64,000 nt of DNA from positions 62,248,001 to 62,312,000 of the forward strand of contig NC_092355.1 of NCBI RefSeq assembly GCF_963676685.1, written 5' to 3'. Made by a program: the position numbers and the translations under genes. The DNA is from Mytilus edulis. Taxonomy: Eukaryota. The notes under the pieces are model-generated. The model had not been told where the DNA came from. It did no database searches and saw only the letters and a program-made list of their open reading frames with translations. This document shows, in pieces, positions 3,621-11,700 of the stretch (positions within the stretch are counted from its first letter, which is position 1; the number at the start of each line of letters is the position of its first letter).

Positions 3621-5496
3621 GGCTTATTTTCTATGCATACAAAAACTCCAGTTGAATTTTATCCAAATATATTAAATTATATTGTGACTTTTTTCTTGTG
3701 ACTATTTTCCCTTAACTTTATTCCTAGGTATTTTGTGACTTTATTAAGTTCAAGATTTTCTTAAAATGAGCACTTTTGTGTTAGGCTTACTAAAACATTT
3801 TACAATGTCACATTTTTTTATTTGTTGGCCTATAAACCCATAAGAAACAAAATAAAAAAAATCTCAAAAGAACTGTTTCCTTCCATTTTTATGCGAGAAA
3901 ACGTCAACAGTCATCATTATCGTCTTTTTTTTTACATATTCACCAGCACCAATCAGGACCAAATCACAAGTACAGAAAGTGTTTTTGTAGGACAACCCAC
4001 CGTGATGTAGACATTTTTTCGTATCGTACTGCACGCATGGAGTGTGTTACGAAAATGAAAAACTTAATTTTGATAATTAGATAAATCAGTACCCAAATGA
4101 CAGAAACTGAATGGAAAACGAATATAAATTAATTTTTCAGAATTTATCTAAATGCATTCAAGGCCTAGCTGTTATACTAGGTCCGAATGCATCAAGCTTC
4201 TTATGTAAAAAAAAATGTTTCGAAAACGGACTGATTTTTTATATAAGTCGTCGTCCTACGATGAATTACGATACAAAACAAAATTTGCTGAGAAATTCTT
4301 TCTTCAAATTTTTTAATAGGGTTATAGATCTTACTACGTAAAATTTGAAATTATTTTGTATTTTTTTTCCCTCAAAAATAGGCTTTCGCAATAAAGATAA
4401 GAACTAAGTAATATTTCAGAATTTCAATATTTCAAGAAATGTATTTATTACTGGACAAGAATTAGTTTCATGAATTTTTCTAAAAAAAAAAAATAAAAAA
4501 AATTAACATACTGAGTATGTAAGCAGGAACATATATATTGACATATTTAGATAAACTGTTCCCATATGTAAGCTGTCTATGATAAATTATAATGTTCAAC
4601 TATATCAGGAGTTTCTAGAAAAATAGGATGAAAAAACGATAAACTATGCAAAACGAATGTCTAACTTGTGAAGCTTACTTTGGTATTCTAAGCAACAAAA
4701 ATAGTGATTCTTTATGTAGATTTAGAACATTGAACACAAAAAAATCTTTTGAAACTTGTAGATGGCAGATTAATCAGAGAGAAAATTTCATTTGTATTTT
4801 AAATGTTTATCCTATTGAGGACGCGTTTCATTATGTTTTTGAATATTCTGCAAAAGTAGACAAACGCTGTTAAAACTATAGTTGATCCCTAAGGATGCCA
4901 CATTTTGTAATGAATTCGATCAATAATTTAACGTTTGCAAATGAAATAAAATGAATGGAAATTTTTCCGACTTTGTGTAGATTTCTCAATTGGGTTCATA
5001 GATTCTGGTAACAATATATATGTTCCTGATAAATTACAAAGTTGAAACTAAACAACAAGTTTATTTAACATTTTTGCAAATACAATATATATTTTTTTTC
5101 TTCAAAGGAACCCTTTTTGTTTGTTTACCGGGGCGAGTTTACTTGTATGTGTTTATTACCTTCACAGTGACACACCTAATTATTAGAGATCAGACGACCT
5201 AATCAACGCAGTTATCTTGTAACTTGTATTGCATAACTTCCTCCAATAAAGGAGCACCTCAATTAATGAGTATTCCACCACCAGTTCAAAAGTACATATA
5301 TCTGAATTTTTAAAATATAAAAGTCACACAGGTAGACATCTATCATCATTAAAAGGAATATTAAAAGTGTTTTGTATTTTTGTGATTTTACTTTTTTTTT
5401 GTATATACATATGTATCGGCATAAAACTATGAGCTCATTCAACGTCATGAAATTTAAAATTTAAAATACTTCCTCGATATTTACAGTTTATTTACA

Positions 5497-6321
5497 TATA
5501 TATATATATATATATGATCAGCAGAAATCGTTCTTCTGGTTTTACTTAAGATAGCCAACTTTTATCTGTATACAGTGTAGTGTGGCCACGTACCCACGCT
5601 TACTGCTTCATAGGACTTTATGCTGAGTTGTAGTAAGTTTCATTAAAGTGTGGCGAGATCCACGCTTATTCTCTGATAAACAATATATATTTAGCCTCTT
5701 CAGTAAAGTGTGGCGAGATCCACGCTTTTGTTGTGTTGACGTATATGTTTGCATTAGAAGGCGTTATGGACTATGGTTGAGTTAACAAGTGTGGCGAAAT
5801 CCACGCTCATTTTGAATTAATGTTGAGATCGCTTCGTAGTTGTGTCCGTAGAGTGTGGCGTAACCCACGCTCACGGTGTCTATCAAGCTAACTTGATGTT
5901 CGATCGATATCATTGAGAATTCTCGACCTGCTTGTGTGTAGTAGAAAGCATAGTCTCCTTGATTGAATTGTCACAACTGGGTTCCGGTAATCCAATTGTA
6001 CTTGAATCAATTATCACTTGGATAAGGTCTACTTCGCTACCGTTGTGTTTGAATTGAATACTGAGCTTTTCGTTTAGCAGTTGGATATTGCTTAAAATTG
6101 ATTTTCTCTGGTTCGACAGTGCAGGACAAAGCAGAAAGAAATGTTCCAAGGTTTCATCTGATGTTCGGCACAAAGGACACGTTGCCAATAGTCCTTTGTT
6201 TTTTGAATGCCTTGTTCTGTCAGCCATGAGTATATAACTTCCTGTTGCTATTCTTAATTTTACAGGTATTCTCATAGCTTCTTGCATAGCATTACTAGCA
6301 GATAGGTTTACCAATACATGT
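5497..6321 (-). mobile_element. 3' part of APE-type non-LTR retrotransposon (RTEX-like): ORF2 C-terminal CCHC zinc knuckle, 3' UTR, (TA)n tail
   Basis: ORF 5910..6314 VKLRIATGSYILM...CPLCRTSDETLEHFFLLCPAL; (TA)n at 5497-5515; joins the 9176 fragment in frame once the insertion is removed. Confidence 0.85.
5579..5871. repeat. Array of five 20-22 bp palindromic repeats (AGTGTGG-loop-CCACGCT) with 40-61 bp spacers, in the LINE 3' UTR
   Basis: Repeats at 5579-5600, 5647-5666, 5707-5726, 5788-5807, 5852-5871; stem arms invariant, loops variable. Confidence 0.85.
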
Positions 6322-7199
6322 CAGTCGGAAACACGGTTGAAATAGAACAAAAGAATCGAAGCTCTTTGTTAGAGAAGGCGATAAATGTGTACTGTAATGT
6401 TTACTATAGTGACAAAAAAAAAAAAAAAAAAGTTAATAGAAACAAACAAAATTACAATTTTCTTCTCAATAACGAAGTGTTATATTTCAAAAACACCATT
6501 TGCATAAGTTTTCAATTTATCTAGTACATAGTTAAGCAGAACAATTAGATAGCAGGTCGACAATATGGGTATCTTTCAAGTTGGATGTAGAAAATGCATA
6601 TCCTCCGATTTCTTTTAAAAAATTACCACGGACGGAAAACATATCAATCTATTAGTTCAGTAATTTTCGTGTCTGCCCTTCTATTATGTGACTCAAGAAA
6701 ATATTCCAAAAAATGGGTAACAATAGTATCGAGAAGAGAAAATCGAGTGCACCTTTTTATTTTAGGGCGTGTTTGAGTTGAATATTTTGTCTTGATATCG
6801 TACAAAGCAAGCATGTTTCATACACCGTCTCGCTTCAGATTCTATCATATTTATATATCAAAGCTACAGGTTGACTTTATAACATAAAAATCACAGTACT
6901 AAAAGATGAAGTATATGGGTCAAGTGAAATACCTATCTAATGAATCACAAAAACAGAGTAGGTGTGTTCGAATAGCTATTATTTTACTAAAAGTACTTGA
7001 CGACAGTCTTTCAAGTTGGATGATGAAAATGCATATCTTCGAAAAATTATAATTTTCTGTGTGTGATAACTAGGGTTTGTAGTCTTCAACAACTAAACAA
7101 ATCTAGTCTGCCCTTCCACGAAATATTTAATTAGAATATTTTAAATGTTTATGAATTTTCAAAAATTCCACCTGACAACCGATCAGACAATAGTTTTAA

Positions 7200-8936
7200 G
7201 AGGGGGGGCAAGGGGGGTCCCAATAACAGTAAAACAGCAAATTGATTTGGCTCATAACAGATAACAAGGAATTAAAATGGACAAAAACAGATAACAGTAA
7301 ATGAAATATTAAAATAATTCGGTTTTTGACAAATCAGTATTTCTTATTACGGATATAATCCTTTGTAATGCATTCCATTTTTTATGACTATGTTTTTAGT
7401 ATTAATTTATGTGTCTAGAATGTGTTTAAACTACTACTCAATATATTATAATATTTTTTATACGCTCGTTCACGGAACGTATTATGGTATACTGTTGTCC
7501 GTCTGTTGTCAAAATGTCGGACATTAACTCAAAAACACTTTAACCATTTGAATTAAACTTTGGGAAATTGTTTATATCTATTGACGTGAGCTCCCTTTTT
7601 GGTTTTTTTTTTTTTTTATAAATTTTAGATTTTAAGTTTCTGGGTAGGTAATGGGTTTTTATTCAATAAAATTGGTGGTTTTTTTTTCAGTTTTCTGATA
7701 ATATCTCAAAAATGCTTTCAAAAAGCAAGGAATTTTGGTGAATTGTTTATATCTATTAACATGAGGTAACTTTCAATTTTTATAAATTTTAGATTTTACG
7801 TTTCCGAGTTAACGGGTTTTATTAATTAAAAAGGGGTGATTTTCCAGTTTTCAGACATTAACACAAAAATGTTTTCAGCAGTTCTCATGAAACGTTGGTG
7901 TATTGTTTATATATATTGACTGAAGCTCCCTTTGTTGCTAATAAAAAAAGAGTTTGAATATTCTGACTTTTTCTAAATGACCATTTAATGAGGTGTGTGA
8001 ATTTTTATTAATAAAACTATGAGGCAAAGTGGTATATAGGGTAGAAAAATCAAAAGCACCAATTATAAGAATGCAATTTATCAAGTACTTCGAACGAATT
8101 TTGACACTCTAAAAGCAATTTATTCCACTATTTTCAAAGGCCTTATTTGAACAATTTTTTATCAGCTGAGGTTTTTGATTGTACCAAGTGTACTAGTAAG
8201 TAGAATACATAGTTTAGTAGGGAAACAATGGCTTGAAACGAAATAAATCTTTGTTTGTAATGAGTTATGTGCAGCTTCGGACCCAAGTACATGGTTGGAA
8301 CTTTCATTGTACAATGCATTTGGTTCTGCTTTGAAAAGAATTACAGAGCTGAGTCTATGTACCATATAATATAAAAGGTTAAGTGGTTGTTAGGACCTTG
8401 TCCTTAACTGAGATCCTTGTAAGATACTCCTGGCCATATGTTTTCCTTTTTGTCATATTAAGAATTGTTTTAATTTAATATGTTCGTACGGAAAACAAGG
8501 AACATTATTCTCATACAAAAAATTAAGATAATTCTAAATACACATTCATAAAAAAAAATGGAATTTATTACAAAGGATAATCATAAGATATACTTGAATT
8601 GTCCTGGACCTCACTTCTGTGATGTGTATATGTTAATGGAATCCTTCTCTGAATACGGGACAAACATATTAGTAGTGGTAGACCCCAATGGCCAATGATC
8701 TTCAATTTATACCGAATATTGACTGTCAAAAAAAATGCTAACATTCCAATTTTCAATAACAGTTAACAGCAAATACATTATCACAATAACAGATAACAAA
8801 AAAACTAAAAGCCCAATAACAGCTAACAAAGAATAAGACAATAACAGCTAACAGCAAATATATTTTCAAAATAACAGATAACAAAGAATTAAATTGCCCC
8901 ATAACAGCATAACAGTTAAACCCCTTGCCCCCCCTC
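7200..8936. mobile_element. Nested TIR element, 16-bp perfect TIR GAGGGGGGGCAAGGGG, flanked by TTTTAA direct repeats
   Basis: TIRs at 7200-7215 and 8921-8936; TTTTAA at 7194-7199 and 8937-8942; ATAACAG repeat clusters near both ends. Confidence 0.8.
7454..7945 (+). mobile_element. Helentron-like non-autonomous element nested in the TIR element
   Basis: tttttatacgc start, gtccgtctg microsatellite, ~175-180 bp tandem core repeats (aattgtttatatctattgac...). Confidence 0.55.
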
Positions 8937-9175
8937 TTTTAAGTTGAATAAATGCAGATAAGATCATTAACTGATGCTCATTAGCGAGTTGATACATTTC
9001 TCTTATAAAATGCAACTGACATATAAGGATCGTACTGGTGCAATGGGGATAAATTTATCGGTTTCCAAGAGCAAAATTGGTAGCGCGTCATCCCTACAAT
9101 GGCTTCCATTTCTACGATTGTGAAAATGAACTGGCGTAATGGGGAGACAATTTTGACGAAGTAGGATCCTGACTG

Positions 9176-11700
9176 ATGTGTCTTTTCTGGTATATATTGA
9201 CTATTTAAATACTTTAGTGAGGGTACAGCTTACAATGACCCTCGATAAAATGTTTCCAATACTTTGATACTTCTTTATTTACCATGGTCTTCCATTTTAA
9301 TTTTTGAATTTGACTGTCTAATAGATATAAAGTTGATGGTAAGTTGTATTTCGCTAGAATCGTTTTAACAATAATAAACCAGCTGTGACTATCATCCGTT
9401 TTCATAGGTAGTTGTCTATATGCAATTTGTTTTTCTAAACTATTATGTGGTTGTCTAGATATATTTCCAAATAATGATAAGATCTTTTTATGTATTTGGC
9501 CCTCTATTGGTAGTTGTCCAGAAAGGATGTATATGGCGGGCGTAGCTGTACTTGTTGGTAAAGAAAGTAATTGCTTAATGCATTTTTTATGGAATATGTC
9601 AATAATATCCAAGTTTTTTCCTGTAGGAGTTACTAATTCCAGGCAGTACAGAAGTACAGATATGACATAGATGTTAAATATATGTAGTAAGGATTGTATG
9701 TCCAGTCCATTTTACCCATGCAAACCAGCTGGTATTAGACTGTACATGGTCGTCTAGCTTTTTTCACGTTTTCATACAACGGATTAGGATCATCTGGTTT
9801 TGATGTGCGTAAGACCCTCTTATGGGTTGTTTGGCTAACTATTGGCATTATTGAGTTACCTATACTCCATGGAAAGGAAGGTTCCTGCTGTTTTCTACGA
9901 TTTGGATACACTGGAAGAATAACACTCTTCACTGGTTGAAGCTTATATCTCTCCCTTCGACTGTAGTTGTATGCCATGTTAATAAGTACCTGTAGTTCCT
10001 CAGGGTTGTCGCTCATTAGTGCCACATCATCTGCACAAGTCGGAGCTGCGCAACAAATGGATCCTATTTTTGCTCCCAATCCTGAGTGCTCGATATCTGT
10101 TAGGAGGTTATTGATGTACAGCTTGTACAGGTCGGCGTTCAGTATACCCCCTTGTTTTACGCCTTGACATATTGAGAATGGTTCAGATATTATACCATTA
10201 AATTTAACTACACTGCTAGTCCATGTGAAGACTATGTATAAGTTTCCGTAGTAGCCAATCTACACCTGCTATGTATAGCTTTCTTAGGATACTCTCATGC
10301 GTTACCACATCAAATGCCGATTTAGCATCTAGAAGCGCTATATATATTATTTTACCAGCATCCCTGCACTCTCTGACAAATTCTTCTATAAAGAAGGAGC
10401 AGTTCATTGGAGCTGAGTTCTCAGTCAATCCTCTTTGTAGCCTATTTTGTTCTTTCAATATTTTAGGTTGGACCTTAGCCTTTGCTACAGGCTCAATTAG
10501 TTTCAGCAGTATTGGCATGATAGTAATCCCGCTATAGTTGGTGACGTTCTTGTTACTTCCTTTGTTCTTGAATACAGGAGTGAGGAGACCCATTTTGAGT
10601 ATTTCAGGTATTGATCATATTTTAAATGATGATACTATCATATTTGTTATAACTGTTTGCAGCTTTTCACCACCATATTTGATATTTTCAGAGGATATGC
10701 TATAATTGTCTGGAGATTTGTTTATTTTCAATCCATTTATGGCATCTTGGACATCTTTTTTCAGTTACAGAGATGGTATTAGTTTGATTGTTACATATAT
10801 CAATTATATTGTCTAGATCTAATGCTAGCTGTTTGTAATATTCGTCGTCGTCATATTCAGGATCATTTGCTGGTTGAGCTAATTTATTGAAATGATGTTT
10901 CCATCCAACTATAATTTCATTGTCAGATTTATATATATATTATCTTGTACATTCAGTTCGGATATACAATTCTTCAGGTTTCCCTTTTTTTTACCAAGTA
11001 ACTTGTAAAATATTTGATCATGTTTAGTTCTAGCATCTAAAATTTCTTGTCTATCATTGAGGACTTTCATCGCTATCTCTTTTCTACATGTTTTTCAAAG
11101 TTCGTATTTCGCAAATTTCATATCACAGTATATTTTGTTGTTCGATGATGTCGGTCTTTCATTTGCTTTCCATTTTGGTAAAGCTTCTTTACATCTTTTA
11201 CTCGCTTGATTTGTTTTAAAGGATCTTATTTTAGGTTTTTGTTTCTTTCTTTTGTATACCTTGGCTCTAGGTGCTGATTCTATTGCTGCATTTTTCATAA
11301 TGGTTTTAACTTGTGTCATAACTTTAATTAGCTCATGACCCGATTGAATCTCACTTGAAATAGCTGTTAGTGACTTGTTAACATTGTCCTCGTATAGATT
11401 CACGTCAATAGTACTCCATTTAATTTTCCTATTAGTAGGCAATATTTTTGTACTTTGTTGCCTATGTTCTATTTTGACATTTAGTCTGCAGGTTATAGGA
11501 TAATGATCAGAGACTAAAGAACTACAGGAGTCAAGTTTAAGATAACTGGAATGGTTCTCAAACAGCTCTTTATCTAGTAATATGTAGTCAATAGAGGATG
11601 TTTCTTCATGCTTATAGTTTATGAATGTATCGGTATTGAATATGATCATCGCTCGTGCATGACTAATCCCAAATAACGGCACTACCGATAAAATTGATTT
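9176..11700 (-). pseudogene. Degenerate LINE ORF2 (APE endonuclease C-terminus + reverse transcriptase); same element as 5497-6321
   Basis: APE motifs SSIDYILL and SDHYPI; RT motifs NYSGITIMPIL, QRG, LLDAKSAFDVV, GVKQGG, PTCADDVAL; broken by stops and frameshifts. Confidence 0.92.

What the first reader, a model, noticed from the sequence alone, without database searches (positions are those of the whole stretch)
5579..5871. CRISPR-like repeat-spacer array in the 3' UTR of a LINE retrotransposon
Seen: five copies of a palindrome, AGTGTGG-(CCACGTAC/CGAGAT/CGAGAT/CGAAAT/CGTAAC)-CCACGCT, separated by largely unrelated spacers of 46, 40, 61 and 44 bp. They lie between the LINE ORF2 stop (5910, minus strand) and its (TA)n tail. 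The 7-bp stem arms are invariant in all five while loops and spacers diverge, which argues for selection on a structure or binding site rather than simple tandem slippage. In the LINE transcript the stem has a fixed C-A mismatch; on the opposite strand this is a U-G wobble. Known: many LINE RTs recognise a single 3' stem-loop. Inference: this is a multimerised RT-binding/packaging array, or a set of processing sites releasing ~60-80 nt RNAs; if spacers vary between copies it could be an RT-linked spacer array. Caveats: no cas genes are present, and spacers 1 and 2 end similarly (ttcattaa/ttcagtaa), hinting at ancient duplication.
Basis: partly seen in the sequence, partly recalled or inferred. 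Interest (0 to 1): 0.78.

Follow-up and report, generated by a model that had tools for sequence, protein, structure and literature searches.

The report
Conserved hairpin array in mussel LINE
The five palindromes are real, but they are a fixed, conserved part of a mussel jumping gene (a LINE retrotransposon), most likely repeated RNA hairpins where a protein docks, and not a CRISPR-like array that collects spacers.

Summary
The five palindromes at 5579-5871 are real. The motif is expected 0.06 times per window by chance. Genome-wide the strict pattern gives 82 hits against 0 for the control.

They lie in the 3'UTR of a minus-strand LINE of a Mytilus genome. The (TA)n is internal. The element ends at 5216 in (ACAAGTT)n.

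The CRISPR-like reading is refuted. Twelve aligned copies, of 28 places found, carry the same spacers in the same order.

Selection on the hairpin is supported. Across subfamilies, shared substitutions hit 0 of 70 arm columns against 15 of 163 spacer columns. Private mutations hit both equally. The spacers show no similarity to one another.

Full-length copies are about 8.3 kb. They carry a stand-alone SGNH esterase ORF0, a PHD ORF1 and an APE-RT ORF2. They hold the same hairpin 3-4 times between ORF0 and ORF1, and 5 or 9 times after ORF2.

With a free loop the motif has 221 genome hits against 0 control. It forms arrays of 6-17 units behind the esterase ORF of other LINE families.

Its third pair is always non-Watson-Crick: C.A in some families, U.G in others, in the same orientation. 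The outer stem covaries.

Best reading: multimerised sense-RNA protein-docking hairpins with an unknown partner.

The scan earlier found an analogous array in another mussel LINE.

The parts
5852..5871 (-). Hairpin 1 in LINE sense (AGCGTGG-GTTACG-CCACACT). It is the first after ORF2 and has an extra outer stem CCGT/ACGG.
   Evidence: covariance model R1 47.7 bits
5788..5807 (-). Hairpin 2 (loop ATTTCG)
   Evidence: R1 37.1 bits
5707..5726 (-). Hairpin 3 (loop ATCTCG)
   Evidence: R1 28.5 bits
5647..5666 (-). Hairpin 4 (loop ATCTCG)
   Evidence: R1 46.2 bits
5579..5600 (-). Hairpin 5 (8-nt loop GTACGTGG), with outer stem CAGT/ACTG
   Evidence: R1 37.3 bits
5216..5887 (-). 3'UTR of the LINE copy. 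It is 672 nt if the stop is placed where open copies have it. It ends in the (ACAAGTT)2 tail at 5216-5229.
5496..5515 (.). (TA)10 microsatellite inside the 3'UTR. It is not the element's tail.
5888..6321 (-). C-terminal part of ORF2 with the CCHC zinc-binding motif. It is frameshifted in this copy, so its own ORF stops at 5910-5912.
6322..9175 (.). A 2854-bp foreign insertion that splits the LINE copy. It contains a ~1.75-kb repeat seen in at least 40 other places at mostly 94-97% identity.
9176..11633 (-). ORF2 body of the same LINE copy (end of APE, then RT). It is 5'-truncated and 95.9% identical to the copy with open ORFs, L068.

Best explanation
The array is a fixed cis-acting module of a Mytilus LINE (non-LTR retrotransposon).

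The element is about 8.3 kb when full length. Its order is ORF0 (stand-alone SGNH esterase), a spacer, ORF1 (PHD finger plus coiled coil), ORF2 (APE, RT, zinc motif), a 3'UTR and an (ACAAGTT)n tail.

The unit is a roughly 32-nt hairpin in the element's sense RNA. It has a 4-bp outer stem, a small asymmetric internal loop, a 7-bp inner stem whose third pair is an obligatory wobble-type pair (C.A or U.G), and a 6-8-nt loop that starts R-U.

The units arose by tandem duplication. The hairpins were kept while the spacers drifted to unrelated sequence. Copy number still changes: 5 units, or 9 in the youngest lineage.

Most likely mechanism (inferred, not shown): each hairpin is a docking site for one RNA-binding protein, and the array loads many copies of it on the transcript. 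The leading candidate is one of the element's own proteins, assembling the RNP in cis. A host factor acting just downstream of stop codons is the main alternative.

Shown: the anatomy, the conservation, the covariation and the spread across families. Inferred: that the active form is sense RNA, and that a protein binds.
For: (1) Part of the transposon. 35 matches in 28 places at 78-100% identity, with the same hairpin order where covered. The 12 aligned copies share the same spacers.

(2) Purifying selection in the active lineage. In 12 aligned copies, substitutions shared by 2 or more copies hit 0 of 70 arm columns against 15 of 163 spacer columns (Fisher p = 0.0066). Private substitutions hit 10 of 70 against 25 of 163 (p = 1).

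(3) Spacers are unrelated to one another. All 15 pairwise local alignments gave z < 1 against shuffles.

(4) The same hairpin sits in a second non-coding interval. There are three exact units and one diverged unit between ORF0 and ORF1 of full-length copies. The diverged unit keeps pairing through a G-C to A-U double change and keeps the C.A pair.

(5) Other families share it. AGCGTGG-N6-CCACACT gave 221 genome hits against 0 control. Of the first 100 listed, 39 are in this family, 52 are in arrays beside the esterase ORF of other LINE families, and 9 have unexamined context.

(6) The third pair is never Watson-Crick. The U-A version has 3 sites (control 6) and the C-G version has 3 sites.

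(7) C.A and U.G are exchanged in place. In family L090 the LINE-sense unit reads TGGT-A-AGTGTGG..CCACGCT-AN-ACCA. Here and in L087 it reads CAGT-A-AGCGTGG..CCACACT-AN-ACTG. The internal-loop asymmetry is the same in both.

(8) Covariation over 17 units of 3 families. 92.9% of helix cells are paired. 4 of 10 pairs change on both sides. The score is 0.162 against 0.100 +/- 0.017 in shuffles (0 of 500 reach it). Slid controls are 21-44% paired.

(9) The array grew from 5 to 9 units in the two copies that have all ORFs open. They are 99.57% identical, on different chromosomes, with unrelated flanks.

(10) A different mussel LINE family has another hairpin type around a homologous esterase ORF.
Against: No experiment or read data shows that the RNA folds or binds anything.

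RNA-seq coverage was 21, 16 and 9 reads, in both orientations, with no pile-up of ends.

Folded as a whole, the sense-strand array is not more stable than shuffles (z = -1.3). The opposite strand is (z = -3.2). Unit by unit the antisense is about 1.6 kcal/mol better on average. The strand is therefore not settled.

The inner arms are invariant, so most of the covariation rests on the outer stem and on three families. The tool itself warns that related sequences can beat the shuffles without any structure.

The hairpin is absent behind the esterase ORF in 3 of 5 other families fetched. It is also absent in 7 loci (6 of them by the model too) from symbiont-MAG records, taken here as bivalve-host DNA. 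It is therefore not essential to this kind of LINE.

The selection test used 12 copies that fall into a few subfamilies.
Confidence: 0.55

Rival explanations
1. Post-termination element. The hairpins, with a bound host factor, act just downstream of stop codons of a multi-ORF RNA. They would shield it from nonsense-mediated decay or allow ORF1 to be translated after ORF0 (re-initiation or internal entry).
For: Arrays start 34 nt after the ORF0 stop and 16 nt after the ORF2 stop. In other families single units start 48 nt after the end of the esterase match. The conserved position across families is the ORF0-ORF1 spacer. The RSV stability element and SART1 stop-start coupling are precedents, recalled and not checked here.
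Against: Non-coding intervals begin at stop codons anyway. A spacer of 12-17 hairpins over 1.6-2 kb looks more like a barrier than an aid to re-initiation. No downstream ORF follows the 3'UTR array. Three esterase families manage without it.
Confidence: 0.2
2. Multimerised recognition signal for the reverse transcriptase (ORF2p) that starts target-primed reverse transcription, as in stringent-type LINEs.
For: Stringent LINEs need a cognate 3' stem-loop bound by ORF2p (PMC4176376, abstract read). A stem with an internal loop is required in eel UnaL2 (PMC1636434, abstract start in a search listing). The last 128 nt here have no notable fold of their own (z = 0.14).
Against: The array ends about 350 nt before the 3' end. 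In the family at C2:76.53 Mb there are 17 units between ORF0 and ORF1, but none in the 1.3 kb after ORF2 (L080).
Confidence: 0.1
3. Double-stranded DNA site: a palindromic transcription-factor binding site, repeated like promoter or enhancer monomers upstream of ORF1 and in the 3'UTR.
For: It is an imperfect palindrome. Tandem units lie upstream of ORF1, for example 17 units at a ~118-nt period. That recalls the mouse L1 promoter monomers (recalled, not checked here).
Against: A dimer site should tolerate the perfectly symmetric versions, yet these are 3 and 3 sites against 221. Loop length varies between 6 and 8 nt. Flanks keep complementarity through double changes. The C.A to U.G exchange keeps the orientation of the flanks.
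Confidence: 0.08
4. A neutral, decayed tandem repeat with no function. The arms look conserved only because of recent duplication or gene conversion.
For: Units 3 and 4 share 48 nt at 79%. A recent 259-bp block duplication exists.
Against: Spacers are at random-level similarity while all 14 arm positions are identical. Selection shows in shared but not in private substitutions. The same hairpin occurs in LINE families whose esterase profile scores differ widely.
Confidence: 0.05
5. A CRISPR-like or RT-linked spacer-acquisition array, or a set of processing sites that release 60-80 nt RNAs.
For: Only the look of it: short palindromic repeats with dissimilar spacers of similar length.
Against: Spacers are the same in the 12 aligned copies. 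No cas-type gene is in the element. It lies in a eukaryotic transposon. No read ends pile up, although coverage was far too low to exclude processing.
Confidence: 0.02

Closest known systems
3'-tail stem-loop of stringent-type LINEs (eel UnaL2, zebrafish ZfL2), bound by ORF2p
   Same: A family-specific, conserved hairpin in non-coding LINE RNA, in an element that ends in short tandem tail repeats. A non-canonical feature inside the stem matters (PMC4176376 abstract; PMC1636434 abstract start).
   Different: Those are single hairpins at the very 3' end. Here there are 5-9 units that end ~350 nt before the 3' end, plus 3-4 units between ORF0 and ORF1. In sister families the hairpins were seen between ORF0 and ORF1. 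The one 3' flank examined from a hairpin-bearing sister family (L080) has none.
Hairpin array around the esterase ORF of another Mytilus LINE family
   Same: Many small hairpins with unrelated spacers flank a homologous stand-alone esterase ORF (25% identity, E 3e-17). The hairpin feature is kept while the rest diverges.
   Different: The hairpin is different. There the loop G-AAG-C is constant and the stems covary. Here the arms are constant and the loops vary. A 3'UTR array was not examined there.
Iron-responsive elements (five in the transferrin-receptor 3'UTR, one in the ferritin 5'UTR) and phage coat-protein operator hairpins / dispersed packaging signals (recalled, not checked here)
   Same: Short hairpins with a required non-Watson-Crick feature, repeated with unrelated spacers in untranslated regions, each binding one copy of a protein.
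   Different: No sequence relation. Those belong to host genes or RNA viruses. No binding protein is known here.
CRISPR repeat-spacer arrays
   Same: Short partly palindromic repeats separated by dissimilar spacers of 40-61 nt.
   Different: Spacers are fixed in all copies. There are no cas genes and no leader. The loops of the repeats differ. The array is inside a eukaryotic retrotransposon.
CR1/L2-type LINEs with esterase and PHD domains in ORF1 (Kapitonov & Jurka 2003, seen only as a reference entry; Metcalfe & Casane 2014, PMC4120745, passages read; Schneider et al. 2013, PMC3905857, listing only)
   Same: SGNH esterase plus PHD finger plus APE-RT content.
   Different: The esterase is a separate ORF0, set apart from the PHD ORF1 by ~550 nt that carry hairpins. 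The host is a mollusc, whereas the 2014 survey found esterase ORF1s only in two vertebrate subgroups.

Membership tests
CRISPR array | Spacers differ between loci or lineages because they are acquired | tested here: not met
   The 12 aligned copies carry the same spacers in the same order. The only differences are point changes, one 27-nt indel and one block duplication.
CRISPR array | Near-identical direct repeats with unique spacers | tested here: inconclusive
   The 14 arm positions are identical and the spacers are dissimilar. However, loops differ between units and one unit is 22 nt rather than 20 nt.
CRISPR array | Associated cas genes in a prokaryotic or viral genome | tested here: not met
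   The element's ORFs are an SGNH esterase, a PHD protein and APE-RT. The genome is Mytilus. The rest of the 64-kb window was not scanned for cas genes.
LINE (non-LTR retrotransposon), CR1/L2-type by domain content | ORF2 with APE endonuclease and reverse transcriptase | tested here: met
   RVT_1 E 2.1e-18 and Exo_endo_phos E 5.1e-08 on the 1187-aa open frame of L068. Weaker hits on the window's own fragments fall below Pfam's cut-offs.
LINE (non-LTR retrotransposon), CR1/L2-type by domain content | Many 5'-truncated copies that share one 3' end with a short tandem-repeat tail | tested here: met
   Copies start at different points and all end at ...ACAAGTTACAAG with 2-3 repeats.
LINE (non-LTR retrotransposon), CR1/L2-type by domain content | ORF1-region domains of the esterase / PHD types | tested here: met
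   PHD: 24.4 bits against a cut-off of 24 on L035, but 20.7 bits, below the cut-off, on L068. ORF0 model pLDDT 91, with top PDB fold matches to GDSL/SGNH esterases at E ~1e-6. D-S-K-G, G and N are invariant and D..H nearly so in 16 sequences. There was no Pfam hit and no PDB sequence hit for ORF0.
LINE (non-LTR retrotransposon), CR1/L2-type by domain content | Target-site duplications | tested here: inconclusive
   Only 4-7-nt matches between flanks in three full-length copies.
LINE (non-LTR retrotransposon), CR1/L2-type by domain content | Placement in a named clade (CR1, L2, CR1-Zenon, RTE-X ...) by RT phylogeny | not tested
No reference RT set was at hand.
Stringent-LINE 3'-tail stem-loop (UnaL2/ZfL2 type) | Hairpin within the last ~60-80 nt, next to the tail repeats | tested here: not met
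   The nearest unit ends ~350 nt from the 3' end. The last 128 nt fold no better than shuffles (z = 0.14).
Stringent-LINE 3'-tail stem-loop (UnaL2/ZfL2 type) | Bound by the region between EN and RT of the cognate ORF2p | not testable with these tools
   Needs a binding assay (PMC4176376, abstract).
Any Rfam family | A match to a curated covariance model | tested here: not met
   For window 5150-6350 on both strands, the only row was Ocean-VII at 14.2 bits (gathering 53.5), E 0.42, outside the array.

The most novel reading that the evidence does not exclude
The AG(C/U)GUGG-N6-CCAC(A/G)CU hairpin, with its obligatory A.C/G.U-type wobble pair, is a new class of retrotransposon RNA element. It is shared by several esterase-bearing mussel LINE families. 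It forms arrays of up to 17 units that load an element-encoded protein (ORF1p or the esterase) onto the RNA. Unit number would then be a tunable determinant of activity, which fits the growth from 5 to 9 units in the youngest copies with open ORFs. Different families would have evolved different hairpin-protein pairs, as in the G-AAG-C type of the other family. That would give each family private recognition of its own RNA.
Probability: 0.3. Interest if true: 0.7.

Novelty: new variant of a known kind. Interest (0 to 1): 0.5.

Why it matters
How a LINE's proteins pick out their own RNA is known for only a few elements, and there a single 3'-terminal stem-loop does the job.

Here a small hairpin with a strictly kept wobble pair is repeated up to 17 times. 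It sits in non-coding intervals of several related, apparently still active, LINE families of a mussel, and no Rfam family matches it.

If it is a docking site, it offers a simple, testable system. There is a defined 32-nt RNA, natural C.A and U.G variants, natural differences in unit number, and three candidate partner proteins encoded next to it. Such a system could address cis-preference, RNP assembly, and the unexplained role of the esterase in CR1/L2-type elements.

It also shows that short palindromes with unrelated spacers in a eukaryotic genome can mimic a CRISPR array without being one.

Tried and rejected
CRISPR-like acquisition: rejected, because spacers are fixed in the aligned copies.

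Decayed tandem repeat recognisable in the spacers: not found. TRF reported nothing. All 15 comparisons among the four spacers and the two outer flanks gave z < 1.

Known RNA family: none.

Same motif in public metagenomes: the exact 20-mer gave one hit, in a GC-rich contig that I read by eye as a bacterial NAD-synthetase-like coding region. I took it as chance.

Same motif after ORF2 of 14 other LINE loci of this genome: none by regex with up to 3 substitutions or by covariance model R1.

Same or any repeated hairpin behind esterase ORFs in 7 loci from symbiont-MAG records, taken as host contamination: none by regex. Six of these were also scanned with the model; L093, a near-duplicate of L092, was left out.

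Expression, strand and processing: 9-21 reads per run in both orientations, so uninformative.

Terminal 128 nt as a classical RT stem-loop: no notable fold.

Target-site duplications: not resolved.

Sequence profile of ORF0 against the PDB: nothing below E 0.6. The fold search was needed.

Rows dropped before the count:
- L010, because its flanks are identical to L009.
- L004 and L021-L030, because they are partial or interrupted.
- L014-L016 and L018-L020, the 9-unit copies, because their alignment is ambiguous.

In alignment A3 the two 8-nt-loop units and the four duplicated units of L068 were left out.

A full tally of all 221 hits was not made. The tool listed only the first 100, on contigs C1 to C7.

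Novelty rests on these searches. Searches returned no listed title that describes repeated hairpins in LINE untranslated regions. PMC10294476 has 0 occurrences of 'esterase', 'hairpin' or 'stem-loop' in its main text.
Full report
WHAT IS THERE

On the + strand of the window, five copies of AGTGTGG-loop-CCACGCT lie at 5579-5600, 5647-5666, 5707-5726, 5788-5807 and 5852-5871.

This is far beyond chance. The pattern with up to 2 mismatches gave 4 sites in the window, reported on both strands as 8 rows. The expected mean was 0.06, and 0 of 100 shuffles reached 8. Genome-wide, the strict pattern gave 82 hits against 0 for the reversed control.

Tandem Repeats Finder sees no tandem array. No Rfam family matches: the only row was 14.2 bits against a gathering score of 53.5, and it lay outside the array.

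THE ELEMENT

Proteins 96-99% identical to the element's ORF2 are named Mytilus edulis or M. galloprovincialis in public sources. The genome is 1.37 Gb.

The stretch 5520-5920 recurs in 35 matches at 28 places, at 78-100% identity. Homology among copies runs from 5216 to 6321 and, in longer copies, further upstream.

The window's copy is on the minus strand. It consists of two pieces:
- 9176-11633, the ORF2 body. It is 5'-truncated and 95.9% identical to the copy L068.
- 5216-6321, the ORF2 C-terminus plus the 3'UTR. It is only 82-88% identical to L068.

A 2854-bp insertion separates the two pieces. They are contiguous in element coordinates.

The (TA)10 at 5496-5515 is an internal microsatellite. 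The element ends at 5216 in ...ACAAGTTACAAG, with 2-3 copies of the 7-mer in different insertions.

In copies with an open ORF2, the stop aligns to window 5888-5890, 16 nt before the first hairpin. The window's stop at 5910 comes from a frameshift.

FULL-LENGTH COPIES

Three full-length copies were found (L035, L067, L068). They share about 8.0-8.3 kb.

L067 and L068 lie on different chromosomes and have unrelated flanks. They are 99.57% identical (30 mismatches in 8313 columns) and have three open frames:
- ORF0, 250 aa from the first Met.
- ORF1, 758 aa from the first Met. It contains a PHD finger. On L035 the PHD score is 24.4 bits against a cut-off of 24; on L068 it is 20.7 bits.
- ORF2, an open frame of 1187 aa with APE, RT and a weak zinc-motif hit.

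ORF0 has no Pfam hit and no PDB sequence hit. It has 17 homologues. In the alignment of 16 sequences, D-S-K-G, G and N are invariant, and the D and H of D-G-V-H are nearly so. I recall this pattern as the SGNH signature.

Its AlphaFold model has a mean pLDDT of 91. It matches GDSL/SGNH esterases and acylhydrolases in the PDB at E ~1e-6. So ORF0 is a stand-alone esterase.

Esterase and PHD domains are the ORF1 types described for CR1/L2-type LINEs. The 2014 survey found the esterase type only in two vertebrate subgroups (PMC4120745, passages read).

I did not place the RT in a named clade.

NOT A CRISPR-LIKE ARRAY

In the 12 copies aligned, the spacers are the same sequences in the same order. 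Differences are limited to:
- ordinary point changes;
- a 27-nt indel in spacer 3 between subfamilies;
- a 24-nt insertion in one old copy;
- a 259-bp duplication of a four-unit block. It gives 9 units in three insertions on three chromosomes.

Nothing is acquired.

SELECTION ON THE HAIRPIN

I aligned the window copy with 11 other copies that cover the whole 3'UTR. The dropped rows are listed under Tried and rejected.

Substitutions shared by two or more copies arose in the active lineage. They hit 0 of 70 arm columns against 15 of 163 spacer columns (Fisher p = 0.0066).

Private substitutions reflect decay after insertion. They hit 10 of 70 arm columns against 25 of 163 spacer columns (p = 1).

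The four spacers and the two outer flanks show no similarity to one another: all 15 comparisons gave z < 1. Only a few flanking bases are shared.

So the units are old duplicates in which only the hairpin was kept.

A SECOND LOCATION, AND OTHER FAMILIES

The strict pattern also hit three sites about 6.3 kb upstream in each full-length copy. These sites lie between the ORF0 stop and the ORF1 start, the first 34 nt after the stop.

A fourth, diverged unit lies there too. It keeps pairing through a G-C to A-U double change and keeps the C.A pair.

A note of this scan (s1-838860) reported hairpins around an extra esterase gene in another mussel LINE. I fetched that place (L085) and confirmed three things:
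- an esterase ORF that is 25% identical to ours (E 3e-17);
- 2 hairpins before it and at least 7 after it;
- a different hairpin type, with a constant G-AAG-C loop and covarying stems.

Following that lead, I found that a profile of ORF0 matches 153 places in this genome.

Behind one of them (L087) lie six units of our hairpin with different loops.

With the loop left free, AGCGTGG-N6-CCACACT has 221 hits against 0 control. Of the first 100 listed:
- 39 belong to our family;
- 52 lie beside esterase ORFs of other families, including arrays of 6, 12, 14 and 17 units;
- 9 have a context I did not examine.

Three other esterase families have no such hairpin within 700 nt. None was found in 14 other LINE 3' flanks. 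None was found by regex in 7 loci from symbiont-MAG records, taken here as bivalve-host DNA; six of the seven were also scanned with the model.

THE WOBBLE PAIR

In LINE sense the third pair is C.A in our family and in L087. In the families at C1:0.75, C1:0.85, C1:88.05 and C2:76.53 Mb, the coordinates and strands show that the LINE-sense strand reads AGTGTGG..CCACGCT, that is, U.G.

The 301 nt I could still fetch (L090) show that this is not an inverted unit. The flanks read TGGT-A-[hairpin]-AN-ACCA there, against CAGT-A-[hairpin]-AN-ACTG here. One unpaired base sits on the 5' side and two on the 3' side in both.

So C.A and U.G were exchanged in place, and the outer stem covaried.

The Watson-Crick versions are almost absent:
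- U-A has 3 sites, two of them private mutations in dead copies of our family. The control gave 6.
- C-G has 3 sites.

I recall that a protonated A.C pair is isosteric with G.U. On that basis, the data say that a wobble geometry at pair 3 is required.

A dimeric DNA-binding protein would be expected to accept the symmetric versions. This is my main reason to prefer a single-stranded hairpin over a duplex DNA site.

COVARIATION AND STRAND

Over 17 units of three families:
- 92.9% of helix cells pair;
- 4 of 10 pairs change on both sides;
- the covariation score is 0.162 against 0.100 +/- 0.017 in shuffles (0 of 500 reach it);
- slid controls pair at 21-44%.

The tool warns that related sequences can beat the shuffles without any structure. 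Most inner pairs never vary.

A covariance model built from these units scores the five window units at 28.5-47.7 bits on the minus strand.

The strand is not settled:
- The whole array folds better than shuffles on the + strand (z = -3.2) but not on the LINE-sense strand (z = -1.3).
- Unit by unit both strands form the hairpin, at -147.6 against -168.1 kcal/mol summed over 13 units.
- RNA-seq gave 21, 16 and 9 reads in both orientations, with no pile-up of ends.

I favour the sense RNA because it is the obligatory single-stranded intermediate. That is an inference.

MECHANISM

What is shown: a conserved, multiplied hairpin in the non-coding intervals of an apparently active LINE.

What I infer: it is a docking site for an RNA-binding protein, repeated so that many copies load on the element's RNA.

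- The array ends ~350 nt before the 3' end.
- Sister families carry the hairpin between ORF0 and ORF1.
- The one examined 3' flank of a hairpin-bearing sister family (L080) has none.

A role just downstream of stop codons (decay shielding or re-initiation) is the strongest rival.

A processing role could not be tested.

VERDICT

The CRISPR reading is wrong.

The scan had already met the same kind of array in another LINE family of this genome.

I rate it a new variant of a known kind, the cis-acting hairpins of LINEs. Interest is 0.5.

Noticed in passing
L068 1972-2724 (G000:C8:38510271-38511023) and 153 matches genome-wide: A stand-alone SGNH/GDSL esterase ORF0 sits upstream of the PHD ORF1 in many mussel LINE families. 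A 2014 survey found esterase ORF1s only in two vertebrate CR1/L2 subgroups (PMC4120745).
   Followed up: partly
window 6322-9175: A 2854-bp insertion splits the LINE copy. Its part at about 7195-8945 is a repeat found in at least 40 other places, mostly at 94-97% identity. It has a ~75-nt internal inverted repeat. Its class was not determined.
   Followed up: partly
window 5216-6321 versus 9176-11633: The 3' module of this copy is 82-88% identical to the copy with open ORFs, while its ORF2 body is 95.9% identical. The copy looks like a mosaic of subfamilies.
   Followed up: no
L067 (G000:C7:40016500-40026499) and L068 (G000:C8:38508300-38518299): Two full-length copies with all three ORFs open are 99.57% identical and lie on different chromosomes with unrelated flanks. 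Both have the 9-unit 3'UTR array. This points to very recent activity.
   Followed up: partly
G000:C2:76531629-76533631 and G000:C1:88048622-88050355: Arrays of 17 and 14 units of the same hairpin lie at a period of about 118 nt behind the esterase ORF of another LINE family. This is a satellite-like expansion of the unit.
   Followed up: no
L071 620-840 (G000:C14:3922800-3924050, minus strand): A tandem repeat of 28-nt period follows the ORF2 of another LINE. Its units are themselves palindromic (AGGTCTG-loop-CAGACCT).
   Followed up: no
L022/L028 (G000:C12:60.236-60.240 Mb): A segmental duplicate of the window's LINE copy lies 2 Mb away on the same chromosome. It shares the flanks, and its array part is 98% identical.
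   Followed up: no
L091-L097 (records titled MAG: Sedimenticola sp. and Candidatus Thiodubiliella endoseptemdiera): Contigs filed under bacterial symbiont genomes encode LINE esterase ORFs (27-35% identity) at 37-45% GC. They are most likely DNA of the bivalve host.
   Followed up: partly
L084 453-472 (metagenome contig Ga0097621_100281833): The only exact public-metagenome match of the 20-mer lies inside what reads as a bacterial NAD-synthetase-like coding region. It is a chance match.
   Followed up: yes
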